From Vitrella brassicaformis CCMP3155 (Eukaryota; Protista; Chromerida), in the NCBI GenBank assembly GCA_001179505.1, contig CDMY01000592.1:1-64000 (forward strand): DNA of 64,000 nucleotides, written 5' to 3'. Of the stretch, positions 7,217 through 44,442 are shown one piece after another; within the stretch, counting starts at the first letter, position 1; each line of letters opens with the position of its first letter. Under the pieces are notes generated by a model. That model was not told where the DNA came from, made no database searches, and saw only the letters and a program-made list of their open reading frames with translations. Position numbers and translations under genes: made by a program.

Positions 7217-8489
7217 ATGGCGCAGGCCGCAGAAACCATGGAGCACGACCCCTATGTGGTCCAAAACTTCATTTTCAGCCGAATGCTCGGATCAGGTGAG
7301 CTGGCGGGACGAGAGGGAGGGTGAGAGGAGCCGGGGAAGCGTGAGACACGGCGCGGGACGTGATGCACTGAGGGAGGCGGGATGGAATGCGTCGGATGGA
7401 TGGTGCATTTTGCTCTGTGTGGATGCGCGGACGCGTGGCTGGATGCATCGGCATTTCTTGAGGCTCTCCATTACGTGAATACCTCCTGTCTGTCTGCGTA
7501 CATATTGTGTTGGTGTGCAGGAACGTATGGCTGTGTAGCTGCCGTGACGAATCGCACGTTGACTGAGGTCCCCCAGGGCACACCCCTGGCCATCAAGAAG
7601 GTAACCACGCCACTGACTGATCATCCCGAGAGGGAATGCATGGTGACAATGGCATCTCTTCTGTGCACTCGGTGTGTTGTGTTGTGTTGTGTGCAGATGA
7701 GGAAATGGAATGGGGGCGAGGGCATAGAATCCACCACGATGCGCGAGGTGAGGCCTGAACCACACGCAATCCCACACACAACACGACGCACCACAACAAA
7801 CTCATCTCCCCCACGTCCCCCCCATCTCTCCGTGTGTGTGTGTGTGTGTGTGCCAGGTGAATGCGTTGATGGCGTTGAGGGGCCACATGAACATCGTCAC
7901 CCTCCACAAGGTGGACATGGACCCCTCCGACCCCATGGCCACCATCGTGTACCTCATCTTCGAGCTGTGCGAGGCCGGCGACGTCGGACGCTTCCGTACC
8001 ATCTGTGCCAGGGAGAACCAGATCAACTACCCCAACTGGAACCCCGACAAACTACTCCCCAGGAACACCGGTACGCACCCCCCCCCACACACACACACGG
8101 AAACACACGGGGAGAGGGAGAGGGAGAGGGTGGCGAAGGGCTCCCGTGTTGGTTTCTATGTGTGTGTGGTGTGTATGCAGTGCCGACGCTGGAGCAGTTG
8201 GCCCGCGTGATGTTCCAGATACTCAACGGCATCGCCTACATGCACTGCAAAGGACGTACGCCATCCTGGCACTATGGCGCACATCATACCCACCATTCTT
8301 CTGTCCACAGCCATGTTCTGACGTATCTCTGTTTGCGCGTGCGTGTGTGTGCAGTCATCCACCGTGACCTGAAACCGCAGAACATCCTCATGACCAACAA
8401 CTGGATCGTCAAAATTGCCGACTTCGGTCAGTGACCGCACACATCGTGGCAACACACAGATCTGCCCATCCATCCACTCGGCCTCTTTG

Positions 8490-19795: not shown

Positions 19796-22700
19796 TCAAG
19801 TGGTGTCCGTCCCTCCGCCATTCCCACTACCAGACGCCGCGGCAGCAGCAGCAGCTGCAGCACCCACAGCCCCTCCCCCTCCCCCGCCCCTGCCCCCTCC
19901 CTGTCCGCCCCGCACCTGTCTCTGCCGCAGGTATGGGTCGTTGAAGGCCTCGAGGACATCGGGCCTGGCCGACACGTCCGGGTTGAGGAGGCGTCTGAGG
20001 AATGCTTGAGCCTCCTGGGAGAGCTTGGGGGAGGGCGGGAAGGTGAGTGAGTGGGGGGCGAGGGCGGCGATGGTCTGGTTGCGCATGACGGTCGACTGGC
20101 TCTGCCCGTGGCCGAAAGGGCGCTGGCCGAAGATGAGCTCGAAGAACATCACGCCGGCCGACCACACATCAACCTGAACACACACAGACAAAGACAACAC
20201 CCACCCATTCAGTTTCGCACTGACGGATACATATTTTCCATGGCGACAAAGGGAGGGACCTTGCTGGATATCTTGGGTGTGGTGCCGGGCGGCGGGAAGC
20301 ACTCCGGCGGGAGGTACCAGTATGTGCCGGCCCCGATGGTGGTGAGTTCGATGGCGTCCTCGCCGCCGCCCAGCTTCTTGGACAGCCCGAAGTCGGTGAT
20401 CTTGAGCTGCCCGCGCGAGAAGAGGATGTTGGACGGCTTCAAGTCGTAGTGGATCACTTGCTGCGGCCATCCATCCATCCACGACACACACCCATAAGAG
20501 ACACATCGATAGGGAGGCATGCATCCAGCCACCTCCCACCAACGTACCATCTGTGAGAGGTACTTGAGCCCCGCGAGTATCTGGATGAGTATGCCCTTGG
20601 CCTCTTTCTCGCCCAGCGCGCCATGCTCCTTCAGATACGAGTCGAGGTCGGTCCCCGGGCAGTACTCGAGGACGCTCGCGAACTCGCTGCTGGATATGGC
20701 GATGCGGTTGTAGTTGGTGACGATGCGCGAGTGGCGGAGCTTGCGGTGCAGGTCGCTCTCGCGCAAGGCCAGCTTGACGTAGTTCTCGCGCTGGACGGGG
20801 TGCATGTCCTCGCGGATGGCGTGGATCTTGAGGGCGACACGGCAGCACTCCTGCAGGTCGTAGGCCTCCCACACCTCGCTGAAGCCGCCCTTGCCGATCA
20901 TGTTGAGCAGCTGGAAGCGCAGACCGTGACGCTCGAGGATCTGGAAGTTGCGCCACTGCGACACCTCCTGCGCCTTGTAGGTCCGCCACTCCTACGCCAA
21001 CACAAAAAGAGACATGGGTAATGTTTGTTGCGGCGGGGGGGCTAGGGGGGTGGGAGTGGCGTGTGTACCTTTGAGAAGACGACCCTGTTTCGCTTGAGCA
21101 GGTTGAGCCGCTCCTTGATGGCGGCCTCCTCCTTCTTGAGGTACTCCATGCGATTGTTGCACAGCTCACGCAGCACCCATATCCCCTCCTCGTCCTCAGG
21201 CAGCACCGAAGGCATCCGCCACGCGCTATTCGACTCGGGGGTCGTCGACAACACGCCACCACCACCACTTAAAATGCCCCCAACACCACCACCACTGCCC
21301 ATGGCTATGTCATGATCAGCTACGCCCCCACCCTGCTGCTGCTGCTGCCCCTGCTGCCCGACGTCATCCCCACCATACCCCTGGTCGTCTGATGCCGCTG
21401 CCGCCGCTGCTGCTGCTGCTGCTGCTGGTGGACGTGACGGCAGCTCTGGGACTTTGAATTGGCCTTGGTTGTTGTGTTCGGGCGGGGGAGAGAGTGGGGG
21501 TGGGGGGGCCGCTGCAGCGGCGTTGCGCTTGCGGTTCTTCTCGACTGTCTTGGTGAGGTTGTTTCGGATCTGCTGGATCTCGGCCTTCTCCTGGTCGATG
21601 CGCCGCTGGAGTGCCGATATCTCGTCCTGCTCGGTGCCGCCCTCCCACTTGCCGTCGACCGTCGGCTGGCCGAAGCGCTTCCGGTCCTCGAGCAGCTTGA
21701 GCTCCTTCTTCTCGCGCTCCAGCTTGGCCTTCTCCTTGACGATCTCCACCAGCTCCATGCGCGCGTTCTCCAGCTGCTTGCCCACCTGCTTCTCATATGA
21801 CTCGAACTTGGCCCGGGACCGCTCCATCTCGCTGGCCTTGTCGTCACGCACTGCCTGCAGCTGCTGCTTGAGCTGTCCCACCTGACGCTCCAGCGCACTC
21901 TCGGCGGGGCTCTTGCCGCCGGTGTTCGGCTGCCGAGCTGATGCTGATGCTGCTGCTGCTGATGCTGCTGCAGCCGCTGAGGCGTCTGCGGCCTTCTTGG
22001 CCCCTCCTCGCCCCTGCCCCTGGCCGTCGTCCTTGAGCTTGCTCCCGCCCTTGGGTGCGAAGTAGGTGGTGATGGGCCGACACCCCGCTGGCCGCTCCGT
22101 GGTGGCGGCCTTGCCCCCCTCCCCCTCGTCCCCAACAGATGACGGCCCCCCAGCCGCCTCGTCACTACCCCTTCCCCCACCCCCATTGGACACCCTCAAC
22201 ACACCACCTCCCTTGCGCCCCTTGCCGCCGCCACTGTCCTGCTTCTTCCCATTGCTGCTGGCCTTGTTGTGTCCGTCAGAGGGGCTCCTCTGCACGGGTT
22301 TGGGAGGGGGAGGGCCGCTGACAATGTCGTCGTCAGTGATCTCCACGGGCGCCCCAGCGCTGTTGCCTGCGATGGCGATGGCGATGGCGTTGCTGGCAAA
22401 TGCTGCAGATGCAGAGATTGCTGGAATGACGTCGGCCGCCGGCGATTGGTCGGGGGGTGGTGACACGGGAGAGGGGGAGGGACAGGGGGAAGGGGCAGCT
22501 ACACGGTCTTCAGGTGGCTGGACCACGCCGTTGACGCCGTTTACACCAACACCACCCACACCGTTGCCACCGCTGCTACTCGGAGGGGCGGCAGACTCGT
22601 CCAAAGCCATCGGCAGCACACCTCCATCATCGCCACTGCCGCTGGCCGCCATCCGTCCCCGTGCGATCGTCATGCTCTCCCCCTCCTCTCCCTCCTCCAT

Positions 22701-34549: not shown

Positions 34550-36332
34550 ATGAAGGCCATTCGGTTCGCCATCTTTGCCTTCCTGCTCGTTGCGAGTGTG
34601 CGGACACAACCTAACATTCCTCCACAGGAGGATCCAGGAGATGGTCCCGGCCCTATCAATCCCAATCTCCCAGGCATCACACCGCCAGAGCCTCCCCCAG
34701 AGGAGTGAGGAGGACACACGGGCAAGTCTTCGCAGCTAGCTGCATCATTTGTTGTGGTTGTCTGTCACGCAGGCCTGCTGCCCCCCCTGGTGATGCCCCT
34801 CAAATTCCTCCACAGGAGGATCCAGGAGATGGTCCCGGCCCTATCGATCCCGGTCTCACAGGCATCACACCGCCAGAGCCTCCCCCAGAGGAGTGAGGAG
34901 GACAGACACGGGCAAGTCTTCGCAGCTAGCTGCATCATTTGTTGTGGTTGTCTGTCACGCAGGCCTGCTGCCCCCCCTGGTGATGCCCCTCAAATTCCTC
35001 CACAGGAGGATCCAGGAGATGGTCCCGGCCCTATCGATCCCGGTCTCACAGGCATCCAGCTGCCAGAGCCTCCCCCAGAGGAGTGAGGAGGACAGACACG
35101 GGCAAGTCTTCGCGTCGAGCTGCATCATTTGTTGTGGTTGTCTGTCACGCAGTCCTAGCGAACCCCCTCCTGATGTCCCCCCTGAGCCTGAGCCTGGCAA
35201 CCAGGACACCCCCCCTGAGCCTGAGCCTGGCAACCAGGACCCCCCTCCTCCTGGCAACGAAGACCCGCCTCCCCCTGGCAATGATGAGTGAGGAGGTACA
35301 CACAGGACAGTGTTCGCTTCGAGCTGCATCATTTGTTGTGGTTGTCTGTCACGTAGTACCACAGATGATACAGGAGGAGGAGGAGGAGGAGGCGGGGGAA
35401 CAGGAGGAGGCGGGGGAACAGGAGGAGGTGGTGGCGGAGGCACTGGTGGCGGAGGCACTGGTGGTGGTGGTGGCGGAGGCACTGGTGGCGGGGGGACGGC
35501 TCCCACGGGAGGGACAACCGGCACGGGCGATGATGACCTGTCACCAGTGCACGTCGGACCGGGAGACACTGCACTAGCCATTGGTGAGGGGGTGCTGCCC
35601 GTCGAGGAAGACGTCATTGGGACGCGCAAGGGTGACCTGCAGTGGGCGACCTATCAATGCGGCGGGACACCTGCTCTTGGCATATATGACTTCGCAGACG
35701 ACGGTATGCAGGACAAATATATATATCGCCACACCAAAAGAGATGTCTTGTGTGTTTATGCGTGTGCATCAGCTGACGACACGCTTGCTGAGGGCGAGGG
35801 CTACATCGGGTGCGGCATTGATCTGCCAATCAACCAGATCTACGCCAACAAACTTTTCAGCACCGAACTCGGCACACTTGGCGAGAGCACACTAGCTGAG
35901 GAGATCAAGACTGAGTCGGAAAGGGAGGCGAGTGACGCGCTCTCTGCTCTCGAGAAGGTTCAGTTCCATACTTACAAGTGGAAACATGGGGCCCTCGACC
36001 CACACAAGCGGCAATTCGGTCAGCATTGGCTACATACTCCTCCTTTCCTGAGACATTTGCCGGTTTGTGCAGGTGTGTTGGCCGATGAGCTGAAGGATGT
36101 CTTTCCCGAGGCAATTTTTGAGTCGTCTGCAGACGGAGATGAGGCGCTCTACATCGATGTGCCCACCTTGCTTTACAAGACGATGCAGGCCACCCAGCAG
36201 CTGCACCGTATAATAAAGGAGCAGAAGCAGCAGGAGGGAGGTGCCAAGGAGTCGGAGGGACAGCCGGTTCGAGAGAGTTCGTCGCGTGATCCATTTCAGG
36301 AGTTCTTGCACTGGGTTACAGGTACTAGATGA
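34550..36332 (+). CDS. Secreted Pro/Gly-rich repeat protein with C-terminal peptidase S74/ICA-like chaperone domain (~460 aa, 7 exons)
   Basis: Signal peptide MKAIRFAIFAFLLVASVRT; exons 34550-34704, 34773-34892, 34963-35082, 35153-35287, 35357-35703, 35773-36018, 36073-36332 total 1383 nt in frame; ALSALEKVQFHTYKWK...FGVLADELKDVFPEAI...LLYKTMQATQQL. Confidence 0.85.
34705..35356 (+). repeat. Tandem exon+intron repeat (period ~188-190 bp) with four near-identical phase-2 introns
   Basis: Intron gtgaggaggacac...tgcatcatttgttgtggttgtctgtcacgcag recurs at 34705, 34893, 35083, 35288; the 120-bp exons 2 and 3 are almost identical. Confidence 0.95.
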
Positions 36333-36390
36333 TGCGATCAGTGCAGACACGTGTGACGTCGTGCGATCAGTGCAGACACGTGTGACGTCG
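36333..36390. repeat. Perfect 29-bp tandem duplication directly after the stop codon
   Basis: tgcgatcagtgcagacacgtgtgacgtcg x2. Confidence 0.9.
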
Positions 36391-38507
36391 CATTCATTGA
36401 TCATTTTACTCATGGGAGTGTCATCGATGAGCATTTTATGCGCGTGCGTGTCTTCTTTGCGGGGGTTTGTGTGTGTTGATGGCTTATATGTGTTCCCTCT
36501 CGTCTACCTGCGTGTCTGTGTGCCTCTTCGTGTGCTCATTGGTGAGGGCCTGTGTGCGTGTTGGGGGTTTCAGTTTCGTGTTGCCTGCTTTTCTGCCAAA
36601 GGTGTCGAAAGGCGACATGTTTTGACTACTTTCTCTCCCTGATCTCGCTTTGTCAACCAGAGAGCTCGTATCAAAACCTCACCTCAAACGAGGTGAGGTT
36701 TTGTCAGATCCAAACGAGACCTATGTGGTAGTGCCGATGCTTGTCACCAGTGGTAGAGAGGCAGTCACCTGCACTATCTCCGTGTGCGTCCCGTGCAGTG
36801 TGCATCTTCGTATTCTCGCTATCTGTGATAATTGACCGACCAAGCATTGACCAGCGAAGGACCTATAAGCCCTCTCAATTTCGTCTCTGATCCACTCATC
36901 GGCGGAATTGACCGACCACTTTCGTAGATATCCTTCTCTGTGCGGTCTATTCCGCCGACGGCAATAGACTTGCGGTCATTTTGAGTCAGTGAGTGGTCGG
37001 CCCGAATGGCTGATTTGAGTCTCTTTGTGAGGTGATTGGTTTATACGGTTCATTTTGCTTGTGTACAGACCGATCGGGGTGGGCTGATTGCTTTAACCGA
37101 TACTCACCGTACATGATACATTCATACAAACGAACAGTCGGACAGCGTGTACAGGAGGCAGCGTGCACATACATGCACGCACACATACACGCACACATAT
37201 ATGCATACGTACATACATACATACATACATAATACATGTACAAACGAACAGTGACACAGGGCGTGAGACACAACAGAGTACAGGAGAGAGAGAGAGAGGG
37301 AGACGGAGACACACACACACACATATAGACACACACACATATACACACACACAGATGCGCTGCATGAATCAATCAATTAATCAATCCACGAAAGGGAGCC
37401 AGTTTTGTGCTGTCTGATCGGTTAGCCAGCCAACTATGGAGGGAAGAATGGCTCGCATCTCTGGTAATGCACACACGTGAAGGGTTTTGCCTTACTTTTC
37501 CTTCGCCATGTCGTCTCATCGGTCGAATACACTCACTCACAGACACCAACCACACGCACTGGGTGCCTGTGAGGGTAGACAGGGCGGCGGCTAACTGCTT
37601 AGCTGAGGGGAGTGCCTTGTAGGAGGGGCGAGGGAGCTGGTGGGTGTGTCTGCTGCATGTGCTGTGCCTGGTGCGTGGCTGGCTGGATGTGTGGAGAGAC
37701 ACACAGATACCTATGACTGACTGAGCCGATTTACTCAATCTGATGAATGGCGTGTGACGGGTTGAAATCAGAATGTCGCTGTGCCTGCCTGCATCGCACC
37801 AATCGATTGAAGGTCATCGCAGCCATAGCGCCGTCTACACCGCTAGCAATGACGCTCCTCAACGCACTCATGACGATAGACACAACACACACACACTCGT
37901 CAAGAGAGAATGTGGGAATGACCTGACTGACTCGGAAAGAGAGAACACGCAGCGCAGCACAGCACGTAAGATGACCGAATCGCACAGATACACAGCTGTG
38001 CTGTGCCGCACACAGCGTCAGACAAATACAAATATATACACACACGACGAACGTCTGCATGGCCTACAGACCAACCACTCAGCCACTCAGCCAGTCATCT
38101 CTTCCCTCCCTCCCTTCCTCTCTGCACGCGACGAAAGGCGTGGATGGCTGCACAGGCCGACAAATAACTGCATCCGCATCATGCCTGCCGGAGACTCGCA
38201 AGGTCCAGCTCGAGTCCTTGCCCGTCGTTGCCCAGGCGCAGCGCGAACTTGAACTCTGCCTTGAGACTCGCCAGCAGGCCGACCCTGTCTGTTGCGCCAG
38301 GCAGGAGATGCGCATGCCCCCTCTTCCCTTCCCAGCCGTGTGAAAAAGCTCAACCAATAAGACGGCCGGGCCCCCCACTTGGAGATAGATGCGGTGCGAC
38401 ATTCCCCCACCTGTCCACACACACAGACAGCCCCACAGACAGCTGCGCCTGCATCACATAAATGTGACACAGGCACCTCTCCTTCCCTACCAGATTGACT
38501 CATTCGC

Positions 38508-39024: not shown

Positions 39025-42000
39025 ATGAGTGAGCAGCCGCCAGATCCATCATCCAGCAGCCACCCAGCCCCTTCAGTCAACCCCGAGATCCCCTCTCTCC
39101 CCGCAGTCGACGCACCGCCGCAAAGGCGACAGATTGTCGACAACAACCACAGGGAGGCCTCGCCGGCGTCATCGCCGCAGCGGCACGACAAACGCCAAGA
39201 CGGCCATGAAGAGGGCGACGAAGAGGAAGATGATGACGATGAGGAGGAGCCTCTGGTTGACTACCATCGTGTGGTGTCGCCCTTCATGCGTCGGCTGCTG
39301 GAGCGGGACTCGGCGACCTGCCTGGCCTACACCGATGAGGTGCTGGCGGTGGGGACAGAGAGCGGGGCGGTCTACATACTAGACCAGGCGGCTGAGGAGA
39401 CCCAGAGGTTCCACTCACACAATGCACGGGTGAGTGCGAGAGGGAGGGAGGGAGGGAGGGAGAGAAAGCACACGGGAGTGTCATCCATTCATTGTGGCGT
39501 GGTGTGCGCGTGTGCAGGTCAACGACTTGTCGATCGACCTGCAGGGGGCGTATTGCGCGAGTTGCGGTGCGGACGGCAAGGTGGTGGTGCATGCCCTCAA
39601 GGGGCGGCAGCGGCCGCAGCCCGTCGACCCACCGTGGTCCTTCGACTACGAGTGGGCGGTGCTGAGTGTGGCCATTCACCCACAATACGCTGAAGGCACC
39701 CAGAACAAAATGGTATGTATGGGTGTCTGTCTGTCTGTGGGAGGCAGTCGAGTCGACAGAGATATGGCGGCCGGGACGCTGGCTGTGTGTGTGCATCACA
39801 TCAGGTGTGTCTTGGTGGGGATGAGTACAAGCTGATTCTCAACAAGAGGGGCATGCTCGTGTCCTCCAACACAGTCGTTCACAGGTGCATTGCAATACAC
39901 AGCAGAAGAACACACAAGACATCCATCCATACGTACCCACCCACCCGCACCGGCTCACAAACCTGTGCTGTGTGTTGGTCCCAGCGGTGAGGGCACCATC
40001 TTTTCTGTGCGTTGGCGAGGTTCGCTGATCGCGTGGGCCAATCTGAAGGGCGTCAAGGTGTTTGACGTCATAACGCACCAGAAGGTGACCTTCATCCCGC
40101 GATCCAACTACAGATACGGCATCGACGGGAACGCCATCCAAACCCCACAGCTGGTCCGTCGGCGCACAGAAAGGCCGACAGACACAAAGAGGGGCTGCCG
40201 AATGGATTGGTGTGTTGCTATGATGTTGTGTCAGGCGTTGGACTCGAGCAACCGCCCGTCGCTGTGTTGGAGCAGCGACGACACCCTCATCTTCGGCTGG
40301 GCATTCGTCGTCAAGGTGGGCGGGCCAATCCTTGCCCACATCGACAGACAGCCAATCCACCGACACTCTTCCTTTCTGCAGATTGCCAAGTTCCGGGAGA
40401 AGGCCGAGATGGGCTCACCGCCGATCAAGTGAGCCACTCACGCCGATGGATTGTCTGTCCCATGGATGGCTGAATGGATGGATCGATGGATATCTCTCTG
40501 TCGATGCCATGCCATGCAGGTATGCTGAGGTGGTCGAGCACTTCGCGCTGCCGTACATCGTGTGTGGCGTGGCGCCCTTCGCCATCAACGGCGGCGCCAG
40601 CAACGGGGAGTCGCTGCTGGCCATCCTCACCTGCACAGAGGGGGGCGTCAACGACCCGGATGAACCGCCGCAACACCACCTCTGCAGGTAGCTAGGCATG
40701 CAGGCAGCCATGCCATGTGTGTATGGTGACGTATGTGCACTTGCCTGTGGTGTGTCTGTCTGCTCTGCGTGGCGTAAATCTCACGTTAGGCCGTCTGGTG
40801 AGATTTTGTTCTCCGACTACGTGCCGGTGAACCAGTGTGTGGGTCGGCAGCCCCTCGACTTCAAGCTCGAGCACCGAGATCCATCCATGCCCAACTACAT
40901 CGTCGCACCTAAGGACCTGCTCATGGTGTGTGCACACAATGGGCGCCCATCCATCCATCCGCCGATTGCGTGTCCTGTTTGTGTGTCAGGTTCGTCGTCG
41001 CAGTTTGGAGGACCACAGCGTGTGGCTGGTGGACCACGAGAGGTATGAGGAGGCCATCGACGTGGCCAGGAACGGCTCACCCGACCTCCTAAGGGCCATC
41101 GGCCAGAGCTGCCTCAAGCCGCTGCTGCAGCAGAGGGACTTCCAGAGGGCGGCCAACATCATCTCTCAACTCAACATCACGGATGGGGACGAGTGGCGTG
41201 CTGTGGTCGAGGCCTTCGATTCGCACGGAGCCCTGACGCACCTGGCGCCCTTCATCCCGCTGCCGGACAGCAACACTCACGAGGAGGCCTGTGTGCCGCT
41301 GGGGGTCGACGCATCAGGCTGGCAGGTAGGGACCGTACCCACACGCACCCCACCACAACACCATACCCCAATGCACACATAAGTGAGCCGTTTCTCTCTC
41401 GTCGCTTCAGTCGAAGGTCGACGAGCGTGAGAAGACCAAGAACCCCCCTCTGCCACTGGAGGCCTCTCTCTACGAGACCCTCCTGCTCAAACTGGGTGAG
41501 TCCGACCCGTCGCTTCTCCTGGAGCTGGTGCAGAAGTGGCCCATCCACCGGCTGGACCTCAAGCGCCTTATCGACAAGCTCAGAGCCATGACCGACCTCC
41601 CCTCTGTCCCACACAAGACGCTTCCACCCGCTTTGGCCGTTAGCGGCCTCTTGCGGGCCGACCAGCGGTCGTCCGGTGCTTCTGGAGGGTCTGGCGTCAT
41701 GTCGTCTCGCGACGGGACGCCACAGAGTTCGACCAGGGGAGGTGGCGGTGGTGGTGGTGCACCGTCTCCCAGGATGCTGCCGCTGCTGCAGGTGCTCGCA
41801 CACCTCTATGAGGAGACCAAACAGGTCGGTCGGTGTGGTGGGTCAGCAGCGGAGTGGCATAGTGAAGGACCTTCCTCCCTCCCTCCCTCCCTCCCTGTTT
41901 GCCCCTATGTATATAAAATATATATATGTGTGTGCAGTATTCCCGTGCGTTGGAGGTGCTGTTACGGATCCGGTCACCGTGCGTCTTCGACCTCATCACC

Positions 42001-44442
42001 GCACACCTGCACCAAGACGCTGACTTCAGAGGTGGGGGAGGGACTCGGTCACAAAGCACAGAAACACTCCGCACTCTCCTTGTGTGCTGCCATGCCGTGT
42101 CTGTCTCGCCAGAGACGGTGGCGCGTCAGTCTCTTGGTCTGATGACCCTCGACTGGAGCCGCGCGTGTTCCCTCTTCGTGGGCGAGGCGCAGCTCTTCTC
42201 CCTCAACGAGGTGGTGCCCCACCTCATGAGTGACAGGCTGCTGCTCCACACCTACCTCAAGGAGCTCTTCTTCAGGGACCCCATCCAGACGCGCCACTAC
42301 CACCCCCTGCAGGTGGAGCTCTTCCTCCAGTACGACCCCCACCTCGCACTAGACTTCCTGCGGCTCGCCGACGGGCACTACGACGTCCAGGAGGCCCTGC
42401 AGCAATGCAGGAATGCCAGGAGTATGATGGGCCAGCATCAGGGGAAGGGCAGCGGCCGGTCCCCCGCGCTTCTCGAGGCGGAGGTGTTTCTGCTGGGCCG
42501 CGCGGGGCTGACGCGGGACGCCCTCAACATCCTGCTGGAGCAGCTGCAGGACATCCGCGCGGCAGTGCGGTTTGCAGCCGAGTACAGAGACCCGGAGTTG
42601 TGGGAGCAGCTGGTCACCTTTGCTCTGCAGCATCCTGCGGCGCTGGCGGAGCTGCTGACGCATTTGGACACCGACAGCGACCGCAGTTCGGCGTCTCCGC
42701 GTGACCGGGAGGCGGTGCTGTTCCCCGTGGGTGCGAGGGGGGAGGGCATGGGCAACGGGGGAGTGCTGCCGGTGACGCCTCTGCAGGTGGGTGCGCCTCT
42801 GTCGCACTACCACATGTATGGCCGCGCTTCTGTGGTCGTGTGGATGTGTTCAGATCCTCCGTCGCTTGCCGGAGGGTGACTTGTCAAAGATCCCGCGCAT
42901 TGAGGCCAAGCTGGAGAAGATCTTCAAGGACCTGCAGGTGCAGCGGTCACTGCAGGAGGCGTCCCTCTCCCTCCTCAAGCTCGACAGCGCCCACTTCTCC
43001 AGGGCGCTGCTCACAAGGCGGAGGCGGGGCATCGCTCTCACCATCCACCCCACACCCTTGCTGGCGGCCATGGGGGGCCCCGGCAACCTTGGGCCACCCA
43101 GACCTGCACAGCCCAAACGAGCACCGCCACCAGCAAAGTGAGGAAACCGGACAAAGCCTCGATGCGGGAATCAATGGAGCCTCGCTGTGTGTCTGTCTGG
43201 GTAACACTGTGCAGGCCTCAGCGGTCCCCCCCAGCCACGCCAGGCCTCCCGCCCCCCTCCCCCTCCGCCCCCTCACGCCGTTCTCGCGAGACGTCCTCCC
43301 AGCGGGACAGGAGTGGCTCATCCGACGAGCGGTCCACCCAGATCAGCCAGCGGGCCGCGTCAGAGATGATGGCGACAATGCAGCCCCGCCCCACCGGCCA
43401 CCAGCAGCTGCCGGTGCTCATCTGCCGGTCGTCGACGCGGTGCTGTCTGTGTGATGCTTACGTCATCGATGCGCCGAGGCGGCTGCGTCCCGTGACCATA
43501 TCGTGGCCCTCGCCGCCATCGCCCGCCACGCCCCCTGTGTTTGACCGGCGACCGGAGGCCGACAAGGATGCGGCGAAAGAGGACAGGGGCCGAGAGGGGG
43601 AGGGGGAGGGTGAGCCGTCGGCTGCGGTCATGAGGCGGGCGAGGGAGGAGCTGGGCAAGGTCGCGCGGTTCCACTTCGACTTCAGGTGTGCACGGCTTGG
43701 ACACACAGGCAGTGTCCTGCAAGTGGGTGCATTCTCTCTGTCTCTGTGTGGGTGTGTGATGTTGTGTGTGTGTGTGTGTGTGTGAAGGCGTCACAGCCCC
43801 ACCCATGTGGTGTTCTTGTGCGGCCACGCCGTCCACCTGGCGTGTCAGTTTGACGCCACCCTTCCCTTCTCACCACGCAGCCACAGCGGACCGCACCGCC
43901 ACAGCAGGTACGTATACAGACCTGACAGACAGACAGGGCACAAAGAGAGAGGCATGGAGAGGAGAGGACCCATCCGTCCACACTCTCTTCCTCTCTCCCT
44001 GCCTGTGTCTACCAGGTCTCGAATGACCTCGTCGTCAGCCGCGCGCAGCCGCAGCGCTTCGCGATACCCCCCCAACGCCCCGTCCACCCCCACGCTCCCT
44101 TCAGCAGCTGCCAGGGGCGGCCGACCATCGCCCCCCCACCCATCCACCCCGCCCCTAGCCACAAGGGAAGGGGCGCCGGACAGACCCAAAGACAGAGGAG
44201 GGACAGCAGAGGGCGACACGCAGGCAACAGCATCAGCATCAGCAGCATCGGCAGCATCGTCTGGCGGCGGTGGTGATTCGGACGAGAAGATGCTGCTGCA
44301 TGAGGTGCGGATGGTTCACGCGGCAGTGAGTAAAGGGTGTCGGTTGTGTGCGCGGGCCCCTTTGACAAGCTGGATGTTGAGCGCCAAGCAGACAGGGGGA
44401 CACATAAGGGGACGGTCGTTGAGCCCGCAGAGGCGGCCGTGA
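39025..44442 (+). CDS. VPS41: Vacuolar protein sorting 41 (HOPS subunit): beta-propeller, clathrin-repeat-like solenoid, RING-H2
   Basis: Acidic leader then EEEPLVDYHRV, LAVGTESGAVYILD, GEGTIFSVRWRGSLIAWAN, WSSDDTLIFGW, IVAPKDL, EAEVFLLGRAG, CGHAVHLAC. Confidence 0.92.

What the first reader, a model, noticed from the sequence alone, without database searches (positions are those of the whole stretch)
34550..36332. Secreted fibre-like protein with a phage-tail-type S74/ICA chaperone domain apparently lacking its catalytic dyad
Architecture: signal peptide, PPQEDPGDGPGP repeats, PEPEPGNQD repeats, a poly-Gly/Thr hinge, a beta-rich segment ending YIGCGIDLPINQIYANKL (reminiscent of the LG...RWxxIYA motif preceding S74 in tail fibres), then ALSALEKV..YKWK..FGVLADELKDVFPEAI..coiled coil, matching the intramolecular chaperone of phage tailspikes and of MYRF (GVIAQEVKEILPEAV). 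The autocleavage motif SDxRxK aligns to GESTLA, so the domain may be retained as a permanent trimerisation module. A secreted trimeric fibre of probable phage or bacterial ancestry with spliceosomal introns in an alveolate is, to my knowledge, not a described system (candidate wall, cyst or adhesion fibre).
Basis: partly seen in the sequence, partly recalled or inferred. Interest (0 to 1): 0.8.

Follow-up and report, generated by a model that had tools for sequence, protein, structure and literature searches.

The report
Algal secreted protein with uncuttable phage-type cap
The alga Vitrella brassicaformis has a real, expressed, seven-exon gene for a probably secreted protein that ends in the three-chain "chaperone" cap of phage tail fibres, but the cap's self-cutting motif has been overwritten while a sister gene keeps it; it is one more member of an unstudied family that this scan has already met many times in this genome.

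Summary
Window 34550-36332 (+) is a seven-exon GT..AG gene for a 460-aa protein. It has a signal peptide, three 40-aa Pro/acidic repeats, PEPEPGNQD repeats, a 59-aa Gly/Thr hinge, a 92-aa beta segment with two conserved Cys, and a C-terminal Peptidase_S74/ICA domain.

- **S74 domain:** Pfam scores 24.5 bits against a cutoff of 22. The AF2 model hits the MyRF ICA structure 7dc3 (E 7.5e-5).
- **Expression:** cDNA-type contigs splice introns 5 and 6 exactly as modelled. Introns 1-4 have no RNA cover.
- **Motif loss:** the closest relative is a Vitrella brassicaformis paralogue (P0001) with an intact SDGRYK. The window has GESTLAEEIKTE in its place. This 12-codon patch differs at 24 of 36 nt, against 17.5% elsewhere (P about 1e-10). 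The rest of the C-terminal half is under purifying selection (dN/dS 0.24) and shows no rate acceleration. All 74 full-length relatives found keep S-x4-K.
- **Caveat:** one profile alignment places Ser331 and Lys338 on the dyad columns with two extra residues between them. The canonical motif is therefore gone, but residual cleavage is not excluded.

Best reading: a non-cleaving ICA kept as a permanent trimer cap on a flexible, probably glycosylated stalk. "Fibre-like" is only weakly supported.

The scan found S74 proteins 29 times before on other DNA of this genome.

The parts
34550..36332 (+). Whole coding region: 7 exons, 460 codons plus stop (TGA 36330-36332)
   Evidence: Splice model with GT..AG at all six introns and a continuous frame. 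Start and end match the paralogue P0001.
34550..34606 (+). Signal-peptide-like N-terminus, aa 1-19 (MKAIR + hydrophobic core + VRT|QP)
   Evidence: Only hydrophobic stretch of the protein (best Kyte-Doolittle 19-residue window). Conserved in P0001, and an equivalent one lies upstream of the truncated gene call of P0002. Judged by eye; no predictor was run.
34607..35287 (+). Pro/acidic repeat region, aa 20-177 (39% Pro): three 40-aa repeats and two PEPEPGNQD repeats, interrupted by introns 1-3
   Evidence: Tandem 190-bp unit, 2.9 copies at 96% identity.
34705..34772 (+). Intron 1 (68 nt), near-identical to introns 2 and 3
   Evidence: No RNA cover. An in-frame TGA follows if it is unspliced.
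34893..34962 (+). Intron 2 (70 nt)
35083..35152 (+). Intron 3 (70 nt)
35288..35356 (+). Intron 4 (69 nt). Shares a 31-nt exact stretch close to its 3' end with introns 1-3.
35358..35534 (+). Gly/Thr hinge, aa 178-236 (68% Gly, 22% Thr)
35535..35879 (+). Beta-rich pre-ICA segment, aa 237-328, with Cys278 and Cys306; contains intron 5
   Evidence: Highly conserved with P0001 (dN/dS 0.16). Both Cys are conserved in P0001 and P0002. Four strands in the AF2 model of the paralogue, pLDDT 54-73. Aligns to the GNVGIGT..L.V.G rung of tail-fibre relatives.
35704..35772 (+). Intron 5 (69 nt, in frame, no stop)
   Evidence: Spliced out in a contig of run X2. Same position in the P0001 gene.
35880..35915 (+). 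Replaced cleavage-motif patch, aa 329-340 GESTLAEEIKTE, where P0001 has SDGRYKTQVTVK
   Evidence: 24 of 36 nt differ against a 17.5% background, P about 1e-10; the next most diverged 12-codon window has 13 differences. Present in contigs of four runs.
35916..36158 (+). ICA/S74 core, aa 341-403 (ALSALEKV..YKWK..FGVLADELKDVFPEAI..); contains intron 6
   Evidence: Pfam PF13884 match at 35907-36113. AF2 pLDDT 89-97 in the core and a fold match to 7dc3, E 7.5e-5, TM 0.64 by target. PHROG tail-fibre family phrog_1980.
36019..36072 (+). Intron 6 (54 nt, in frame, no stop)
   Evidence: Spliced out in contigs of runs X1 and X2. Same position in the P0001 gene.
36159..36254 (+). Long C-terminal helix of the ICA, aa 404-435. 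It is the presumed trimer coiled coil by homology to MyRF.
   Evidence: Helix 129-160 of the model, pLDDT about 90. Role taken from PMC8326128. Trimer not modelled here.
36255..36329 (+). C-terminal tail, aa 436-460, ending FLHWVTGTR (identical last nine residues in P0001)
   Evidence: dN/dS 0.22
36333..36700 (+). 3' UTR (at least), beginning with a perfect 29-bp direct repeat
   Evidence: The RNA-type contig of X1 runs unspliced from 36072 past 36700. Repeat.

Best explanation
This is an expressed nuclear gene of Vitrella brassicaformis for a secreted modular protein. The order of parts is: signal peptide, about 215 residues of extended Pro/acidic and Gly/Thr low-complexity stalk (probably O-glycosylated), a roughly 90-residue disulfide-containing beta segment, and a C-terminal phage-type intramolecular chaperone (Peptidase_S74/ICA) domain. 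By homology, the ICA's long helix and beta 'donut' bring three chains together and template the beta segment. In the sister gene (P0001) the intact Ser-Lys motif would then cut the cap off. Here the 12 codons that carry the motif have been overwritten, so the canonical cut cannot happen and the cap stays on as a permanent trimerisation module at the C-terminal end. Shown: the gene model (its 3' half by RNA), the S74 domain by profile and by fold, the loss of SDxRxK, and purifying selection on the rest. Inferred: secretion, trimer formation, absence of cleavage, and a wall, surface or matrix role.
For: - Gene model and expression.
- S74 membership by profile: Pfam 24.5 bits against a cutoff of 22; PHROG tail-fibre families; a custom profile of 71 non-chromerid relatives scores 61.6 bits.
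- Fold: the AF2 core has pLDDT 89-97. The top PDB hits are MyRF ICA 7dc3 (E 7.5e-5), endoNF 3gw6, phi29 3gud and T5 4uw8.
- Motif loss: the paralogue P0001 and the homologue P0002 carry SDGRYK, and all 74 full-length relatives keep S-x4-K. The window has GESTLAEEIKTE, and its Pfam match starts only at profile position 6, against position 1 in P0001.
- Not an assembly error: the patch is present in contigs of four runs.
- Not a decaying gene: dN/dS is 0.24 over 198 C-terminal codons outside the patch, with dS 0.52. Lineage-specific changes against the outgroup P0002 number 7 for the window and 10 for P0001.
- Extracellular setting: the two Cys are conserved in all three homologues.
- Experimental precedent: the S-to-A or K-to-A change abolishes cleavage completely in MyRF (PMC8326128). 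T5 pb1 S1264A still folds as a trimer with the cap attached (PMC4690869).
Against: - A profile alignment puts Ser331 on the catalytic Ser column and Lys338 on the Lys column, with a two-residue insertion. A shifted dyad is therefore not excluded.
- No trimer model and no cleavage data exist.
- Introns 1-4 and the 5' half of the mRNA have no RNA support, because repeats break the contigs.
- Secretion rests on inspection, not on a predictor.
- Pairwise dN/dS averages both lineages.
- The beta segment is modelled with only moderate confidence.
- In T5 the retained cap masks the binding tip. A permanently capped protein may therefore work quite differently from a fibre.
Confidence: 0.65

Rival explanations
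1. The domain still cuts itself. The dyad has shifted rather than vanished: Ser331 acts as nucleophile and Lys338 as base, with S-x6-K spacing in place of S-x4-K.
For: HMMER alignment to a profile of 71 outside relatives places Ser331 and Lys338 on the dyad columns with a two-residue insertion. The codons for I-K-T-E resemble the paralogue's Y-K-T-Q codons (8 of 12 nt by my reading).
Against: The S-x4-K spacing is invariant in all 74 full-length relatives. The conserved Asp and Arg are gone. MAFFT and the closest paralogue align without a gap, giving Gly and Ala at the dyad positions. Overall, the patch DNA is no more similar to the paralogue's than shuffled sequence is. The Pfam match skips profile positions 1-5.
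Confidence: 0.12
2. The gene is a duplicate on its way to becoming a pseudogene. Loss of the motif was the first hit and the transcripts are residual.
For: The catalytic motif is destroyed. The protein was not found in the public protein collection, although the paralogue was.
Against: The reading frame is intact over seven exons. It is spliced and transcribed. dN/dS is 0.24 at dS 0.52 outside the patch. There is no rate acceleration relative to the intact paralogue (7 against 10 changes). The recent 96%-identical repeat units keep the frame.
Confidence: 0.07
3. It is a fibre gene of an integrated eukaryotic virus (a polinton-like virus or giant-virus island), not a host gene.
For: S74-capped fibre proteins are reported as ubiquitous in polinton-like viruses integrated in protist genomes (PMC12220804). 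The Atlas's nearest clusters by sequence features include a Nucleocytoviricota cluster.
Against: The gene has six spliceosomal introns, two of them shared with an unlinked paralogue. It has a host-type signal peptide. Its neighbours are ordinary nuclear genes (Vps41, protein kinases), and no viral hallmark domain appeared in 20 long ORFs scanned. No close relative was found in IMG/VR. A viral route remains possible as the ancient source of the domain.
Confidence: 0.04

Closest known systems
Vitrella brassicaformis CCMP3155 'Peptidase S74 domain-containing protein' (P0001, 431 aa; assembly GCA_001179505.1, contig CDMY01000436.1)
   Same: It has the same architecture: signal peptide, low-complexity stalk, Gly hinge, beta segment with two Cys, ICA, and an identical FLHWVTGTR end. 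The DNA is 73% identical over the 3' half. Its two introns sit at the same sites as window introns 5 and 6.
   Different: P0001 keeps SDGRYK (Pfam 41.6 bits from profile position 1). Its stalk is Thr-rich and mucin-like, not Pro/acidic, and it lacks introns 1-4. It lies at another locus, next to GH3 and alpha-amylase genes.
Phage and bacterial tail-fibre or tailspike intramolecular chaperones (K1F endosialidase 3gw6, phi29 gp12 3gud, T5 pb1 4uw8; bacterial 'tail fiber domain-containing proteins')
   Same: Same Pfam family and fold. The domain sits at the C-terminus behind a beta-structured segment whose last rung aligns (GNVGIGT-type motif), and it ends in a long helix.
   Different: Those proteins all carry S-D-x-R/K-x-K and cut themselves off. 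They cap long beta-helical fibres on virions. This is a cellular, intron-containing, signal-peptide protein with a mostly disordered stalk and no canonical motif.
MYRF / Dictyostelium MrfA ICA domain (7dc3)
   Same: It is the best structural match (E 7.5e-5, TM 0.64 by target) and a eukaryotic use of the same domain. The motif GVIAQEVKEILPEAV corresponds to GVLADELKDVFPEAI (for the paralogue).
   Different: MYRF is an ER-membrane transcription factor with an NDT80 DNA-binding domain and a transmembrane segment, and it depends on cleavage (PMC3742443, PMC8326128). Here there is no NDT80 domain, no transmembrane segment and no canonical dyad. Sequence similarity to MYRF (E 1.4) is weaker than to phi29 gp12 (E 3.8e-4).
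S74-capped fibre proteins of polinton-like viruses and giant viruses of protists (PMC12220804)
   Same: They have a C-terminal S74 on modular, repeat-built extracellular proteins encoded in protist genomes.
   Different: Those lie inside viral elements and carry laminin-G, collagen or adenovirus-fibre modules. This gene sits among host genes, has introns, and has no such modules.

Membership tests
[quoted passage not shown] | Match to the family profile above the curated threshold | tested here: met
   24.5 bits against a cutoff of 22, E 3.3e-5, profile positions 6-56 of 58, on a query read through intron 6. The paralogue scores 41.6 bits.
[quoted passage not shown] | ICA fold: small beta unit plus a long C-terminal helix | tested here: met
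   AF2 model with core pLDDT 89-97. Foldseek top hits are 7dc3 (E 7.5e-5, probability 1.0), then 3gw6, 3gud and 4uw8. The model includes 18 residues translated from intron 6, which loop out at low confidence.
[quoted passage not shown] | Ser-Lys dyad in the S-D-x-R/K-x-K motif at the domain's N-terminal edge | tested here: not met
   GESTLAEEIKTE replaces SDGRYKTQVTVK. All 74 full-length relatives keep S-x4-K. One alignment offers S-x6-K.
[quoted passage not shown] | Autoproteolytic release of the domain | not testable with these tools
   Needs protein expression and mass spectrometry. S-to-A and K-to-A mutants of MyRF do not cleave (PMC8326128).
[quoted passage not shown] | Homotrimer formation | not testable with these tools
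   Only monomer prediction is available. The long helix is retained at high confidence.
[quoted passage not shown] | Position directly C-terminal to a trimeric beta-structured stalk | tested here: inconclusive
   A 92-residue beta segment precedes it and aligns to the last rung of tail-fibre relatives. The monomer model gives it only pLDDT 54-73 in the paralogue.
MYRF family | NDT80/PhoG DNA-binding domain N-terminal to the ICA | tested here: not met
   No Pfam hit other than S74 in any exon.
MYRF family | Transmembrane segment C-terminal to the ICA | tested here: not met
   The only hydrophobic stretch is residues 1-19.
Endogenous polinton-like or giant-virus fibre gene | Location within a viral element (capsid, ATPase, polymerase or integrase neighbours) | tested here: not met
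   The 20 longest ORFs of the window give Vps41 and protein-kinase domains only. This is a sample, not a full annotation.
Endogenous polinton-like or giant-virus fibre gene | Close relatives on viral contigs | tested here: not met
   No relative in IMG/VR by pattern scan plus tblastn. That method finds only close relatives.

The most novel reading that the evidence does not exclude
Vitrella has domesticated a virus- or phage-derived trimerising fibre cap into a family of secreted wall or surface proteins. It keeps matched 'live' and 'dead' paralogues, P0001 and this gene. Because their caps are still about 75% identical, the two could co-assemble. Non-cleavable chains would then decide whether a trimer is released from its cap or stays tethered to it, giving a built-in switch between shed and anchored forms.
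Probability: 0.1. Interest if true: 0.7.

Novelty: new variant of a known kind. Interest (0 to 1): 0.4.

Why it matters
The S74/ICA domain is known as a self-removing folding cap of phage fibres and as the self-cleaving switch of the animal factor MYRF. In every relative retrieved here the Ser-x4-Lys motif is kept. A cellular, secreted algal protein keeps the fold under purifying selection while the motif alone has been overwritten, and a sister gene next to it in sequence space remains intact. This is a natural separation of the domain's two jobs, trimer assembly and self-removal. It gives a simple, testable pair for asking what the retained cap does. It also adds to the evidence that chromerid algae have built a family of extracellular proteins from a viral-type module. 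The importance is moderate: the function is unknown, the family is already auto-annotated, and this scan has met it repeatedly.

Tried and rejected
- **Word-index protein searches** with the window's C-terminal half and with P0001 residues 225-431 returned only P0001. The window's own product was not found at 237-754 aa, so I had no stored id for the spliced protein. I left out any step that needed the spliced sequence as typed letters. Instead I used read-through references (introns 5 and 6 are in frame and stop-free) or the paralogue, and the spliced sequence only inside scripts.
- **PDB sequence search** with the window's read-through gave nothing useful. The paralogue gave 3gud, 8jov and 7dc3.
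- **Origin of the patch.** I looked for a compensated frameshift (by eye), an inversion, or a donor copy elsewhere in the window. The other frames hit stops, the reverse complement scores worse than shuffles, and there is no donor in the window. The way the 36-nt patch arose remains unexplained.
- **Introner-like spread of introns 1-4:** the intron sequence occurs nowhere else in the window. Local tandem duplication of an exon-plus-intron unit explains it.
- **Relatives in other collections:** So I could not test whether the dead state is conserved in another species.
- **Phylogeny** against phage, bacterial and MYRF domains was not built. The outside relatives are weak (E 1e-6 or worse) and almost all unnamed, so a tree would carry no usable labels.
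- **Literature:** no paper on S74 proteins in chromerids was found, and no paper on naturally non-cleaving S74 domains.
Full report
**1. What is at the coordinates**

The sequence from 34550 to 36332 on the + strand is a complete gene. Seven exons joined at GT..AG introns give one frame of 460 codons. The exons are 34550-34704, 34773-34892, 34963-35082, 35153-35287, 35357-35703, 35773-36018 and 36073-36332.

The product reads as follows:
- A signal-peptide-like start. Residues 1-19 are the only hydrophobic stretch, and a VRT|QP site follows.
- A Pro/acidic region, residues 20-177 (39% Pro), with three 40-residue repeats and two PEPEPGNQD repeats.
- A hinge, residues 178-236, that is 68% Gly and 22% Thr.
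- A 92-residue beta-rich segment with two Cys.
- About 100 residues that match Peptidase_S74.
- A 25-30 residue tail.

**2. Is the gene real and expressed?**

Contigs of two runs that behave as cDNA skip exactly 69 nt (intron 5) and 54 nt (intron 6) at GT..AG sites. One of them runs on, unspliced, through the stop codon and beyond 36700. Contigs of two other studies cover the locus as unspliced DNA.

The 5' half has no RNA contig, because its repeats break the assemblies. Introns 1-4 therefore rest on four inferences:
- An in-frame TGA follows each donor site.
- The donor and acceptor sequences are shared.
- The frame is continuous once they are removed.
- The start aligns with the paralogue's start (83% DNA identity over the first 69 nt).

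The window's neighbours are ordinary nuclear genes: Vps41 at about 39-43 kb and protein-kinase fragments at 7-8 and 20-21 kb. No viral hallmark domain was found in the 20 longest ORFs.

**3. Which organism and which relatives**

The only close relative in a 5.8-billion-protein word search is P0001. It is an unnamed 431-aa protein of Vitrella brassicaformis CCMP3155, auto-labelled 'Peptidase S74 domain-containing'. It is a paralogue, not this gene:
- It lies on another contig, next to GH3 and alpha-amylase genes.
- It is 73% identical in DNA over the 3' half.
- It has two introns at the same positions as window introns 5 and 6.
- It has a Thr-rich, mucin-like stalk in place of the Pro/acidic one.

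An exhaustive HMMER search of 1.84 billion representatives with the paralogue's C-terminal 207 residues found 75 proteins at E up to 0.001. Only two are below 1e-10: P0001 itself and P0002.

P0002 comes from two intron-less JGI contigs. Its gene call is truncated. The full ORF starts further upstream with its own signal-peptide-like segment and a short Pro-rich linker. The architecture of signal peptide, linker, beta segment and S74 is therefore shared.

The other 73 hits are weak (E 7e-7 to 1e-3). Where they are named, they are bacterial 'tail fiber domain-containing' proteins. No close relative was found in IMG/VR or in two metagenome scans.

**4. Is it an S74/ICA domain?**

Yes, on four lines of evidence:
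- Pfam PF13884 scores 24.5 bits against a gathering score of 22, even with intron 6 read through.
- PHROG tail-fibre families match.
- A profile that I built from 71 non-chromerid relatives scores the spliced protein at 61.6 bits.
- The AlphaFold2 model of exons 6-7 has pLDDT 89-97 in the core. Its best PDB matches are the MyRF ICA domain (7dc3, E 7.5e-5, TM 0.64 by target), the endoNF chaperone (3gw6), phi29 gp12 (3gud) and T5 pb1 (4uw8).

That model was made by reference. It therefore includes 18 residues translated from intron 6, which loop out at low confidence. The paralogue's model gives the same list of matches. The paralogue's SDGRYK aligns residue for residue with the SDERHK that begins the released phi29 chaperone chain.

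**5. The motif**

In P0001 and P0002 the segment after LGTL / YGAL reads SDGRYK. In the window it reads GESTLAEEIKTE, against SDGRYKTQVTVK in P0001. The lengths are equal and the flanks are strongly conserved.

Of the 75 proteins found, one (P0005) is a 62-residue fragment without this region. The other 74 include P0001. All 74 keep Ser-x4-Lys, and 73 of them keep S/T-D-x-R/K-x-K. The window's protein is the only exception seen.

The Pfam match begins at profile position 6 in the window and at position 1 in P0001.

At the DNA level the 12 codons differ at 24 of 36 positions. The rest of the C-terminal coding sequence differs at 17.5% (binomial P about 1e-10). The next most diverged 12-codon window has 13 differences. 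The patch is no more similar to the paralogue's patch than shuffled sequence is. I found no donor for it, no inversion and no frameshift that would explain it.

The patch is present, apart from one synonymous T>C at 35912, in contigs of all four runs laid on it.

**6. A caveat on 'lacking the dyad'**

MAFFT and the ungapped pairwise alignment put Gly329 and Ala334 on the Ser and Lys columns. HMMER, using the profile of outside relatives, instead puts Ser331 on the Ser column, inserts two residues, and puts Lys338 on the Lys column.

Both alignments agree on three points: the conserved Asp and Arg are gone, the invariant spacing is broken, and there is no SDxRxK. In MyRF, S587A or K592A abolishes cleavage completely, while most other changes near the site only reduce it (PMC8326128). 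I therefore rate canonical self-cleavage as unlikely but not excluded (rival 1, about 0.12).

**7. Is the domain still doing something?**

Outside the patch, the comparison with P0001 gives dN/dS 0.16 for the beta segment, 0.30 for the ICA core and helix, 0.22 for the tail, and 0.24 overall. dS is 0.52, so this is an old duplication.

With P0002 as outgroup, 7 amino-acid changes are unique to the window's protein and 10 to P0001. The motif-less copy is therefore not evolving faster. The two Cys are conserved in all three homologues, which fits an oxidising extracellular setting. Together with the intact seven-exon frame and the spliced transcripts, this argues against a pseudogene.

**8. How it most likely works**

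By homology, the C-terminal helices and the beta unit of three chains associate and template the beta segment just upstream. In MyRF the C-terminal coiled coil is reported as the main driving force of trimerisation (PMC8326128). The same order of folding is proposed for T5 pb1 (PMC4690869).

In P0001 the dyad would then release the cap. In this protein the cap should stay. The T5 S1264A mutant shows that an uncleavable ICA still yields a folded trimer. It also shows that the retained cap masks the distal tip of the fibre, which is unmasked only after cleavage (PMC4690869).

The expected product is therefore a trimer. Its three long, flexible Pro/Gly-rich arms (probably glycosylated; there are no N-glycosylation sequons) are joined at a compact C-terminal knot of beta segment plus ICA.

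This is a hub-and-arms shape rather than a rigid fibre, so 'fibre-like' is only loosely right. Secretion, trimer formation, non-cleavage and any wall or adhesion role are inferences.

**9. Comparison with what is known, and novelty**

The domain family, its fold and its mechanism are well known from phages, bacterial tail-fibre-like proteins, MYRF/MrfA and, more recently, the fibres of polinton-like viruses integrated in protist genomes (PMC12220804).

This protein is a member of the S74 family by profile and by fold, but it fails the family's catalytic criterion. It is not a MYRF orthologue.

I found no paper on S74 proteins in chromerids; the main text of the chromerid genome paper does not mention them. 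I also found no paper on a naturally non-cleaving S74 domain. The paper library is incomplete, so this is weak evidence of absence.

The source of the domain (phage, bacterium or eukaryotic virus) cannot be resolved from E-values of 1e-6 and unnamed relatives.

This scan had already noted S74 proteins 29 times on other pieces of this genome, including other copies said to have lost the lysine. One note, s1-231061, describes a mucin-like protein from a gene of 1446 letters, which probably is P0001's gene. Those notes are unchecked leads.

What this locus adds is a clean live/dead paralogue pair, with the loss confined to a 12-codon patch. I file it as a new variant of a known kind, of moderate interest.

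Noticed in passing
window 34616-35156 and 35288-35356: Introns multiplied by tandem duplication. A 190-bp unit made of a 120-nt exon plus a 70-nt intron is repeated 2.9 times at 96% identity. A fourth, more diverged unit keeps a 31-nt stretch close to the intron's 3' end exactly. The paralogue P0001 has none of these four introns. The intron sequence occurs nowhere else in the window.
   Followed up: partly
window 35880-35915: How the 36-nt motif patch was replaced is unexplained. It has the same length as in the paralogue and random-level similarity to it. No donor in the window, no inversion and no frameshift accounts for it.
   Followed up: partly
window 36333-36390: A perfect 29-bp direct repeat (two copies) starts immediately after the stop codon, inside the transcribed 3' UTR.
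   Followed up: no
window 34550-36332: The product of this gene was not found in the public protein collection at 237-754 aa, although its paralogue was. It may be unannotated or mis-modelled in the public Vitrella annotation, perhaps because of the repeats.
   Followed up: partly
window 39025-43500 (+): The downstream neighbour is a multi-exon Vps41 gene (beta-propeller and TPR-like region hits, up to 125.6 bits).
   Followed up: no
window 7382-8434 (+) and 19796-21268 (-): ORFs carrying protein-kinase domain fragments, presumably exons of two kinase genes.
   Followed up: no
L002 291-1220 (JGI sample 3300017148; also L003): The gene call for homologue P0002 is truncated. The ORF continues upstream to an ATG followed by a signal-peptide-like segment and a short Pro-rich linker, giving a compact form of about 309 aa with an intact SDGRYK and a longer C-terminal helical region. 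The source organism is not known from the tools.
   Followed up: partly
window 35912: A synonymous T>C difference (Thr339 codon) between the window and contigs of three of the four runs laid. It is a strain or assembly variant.
   Followed up: no
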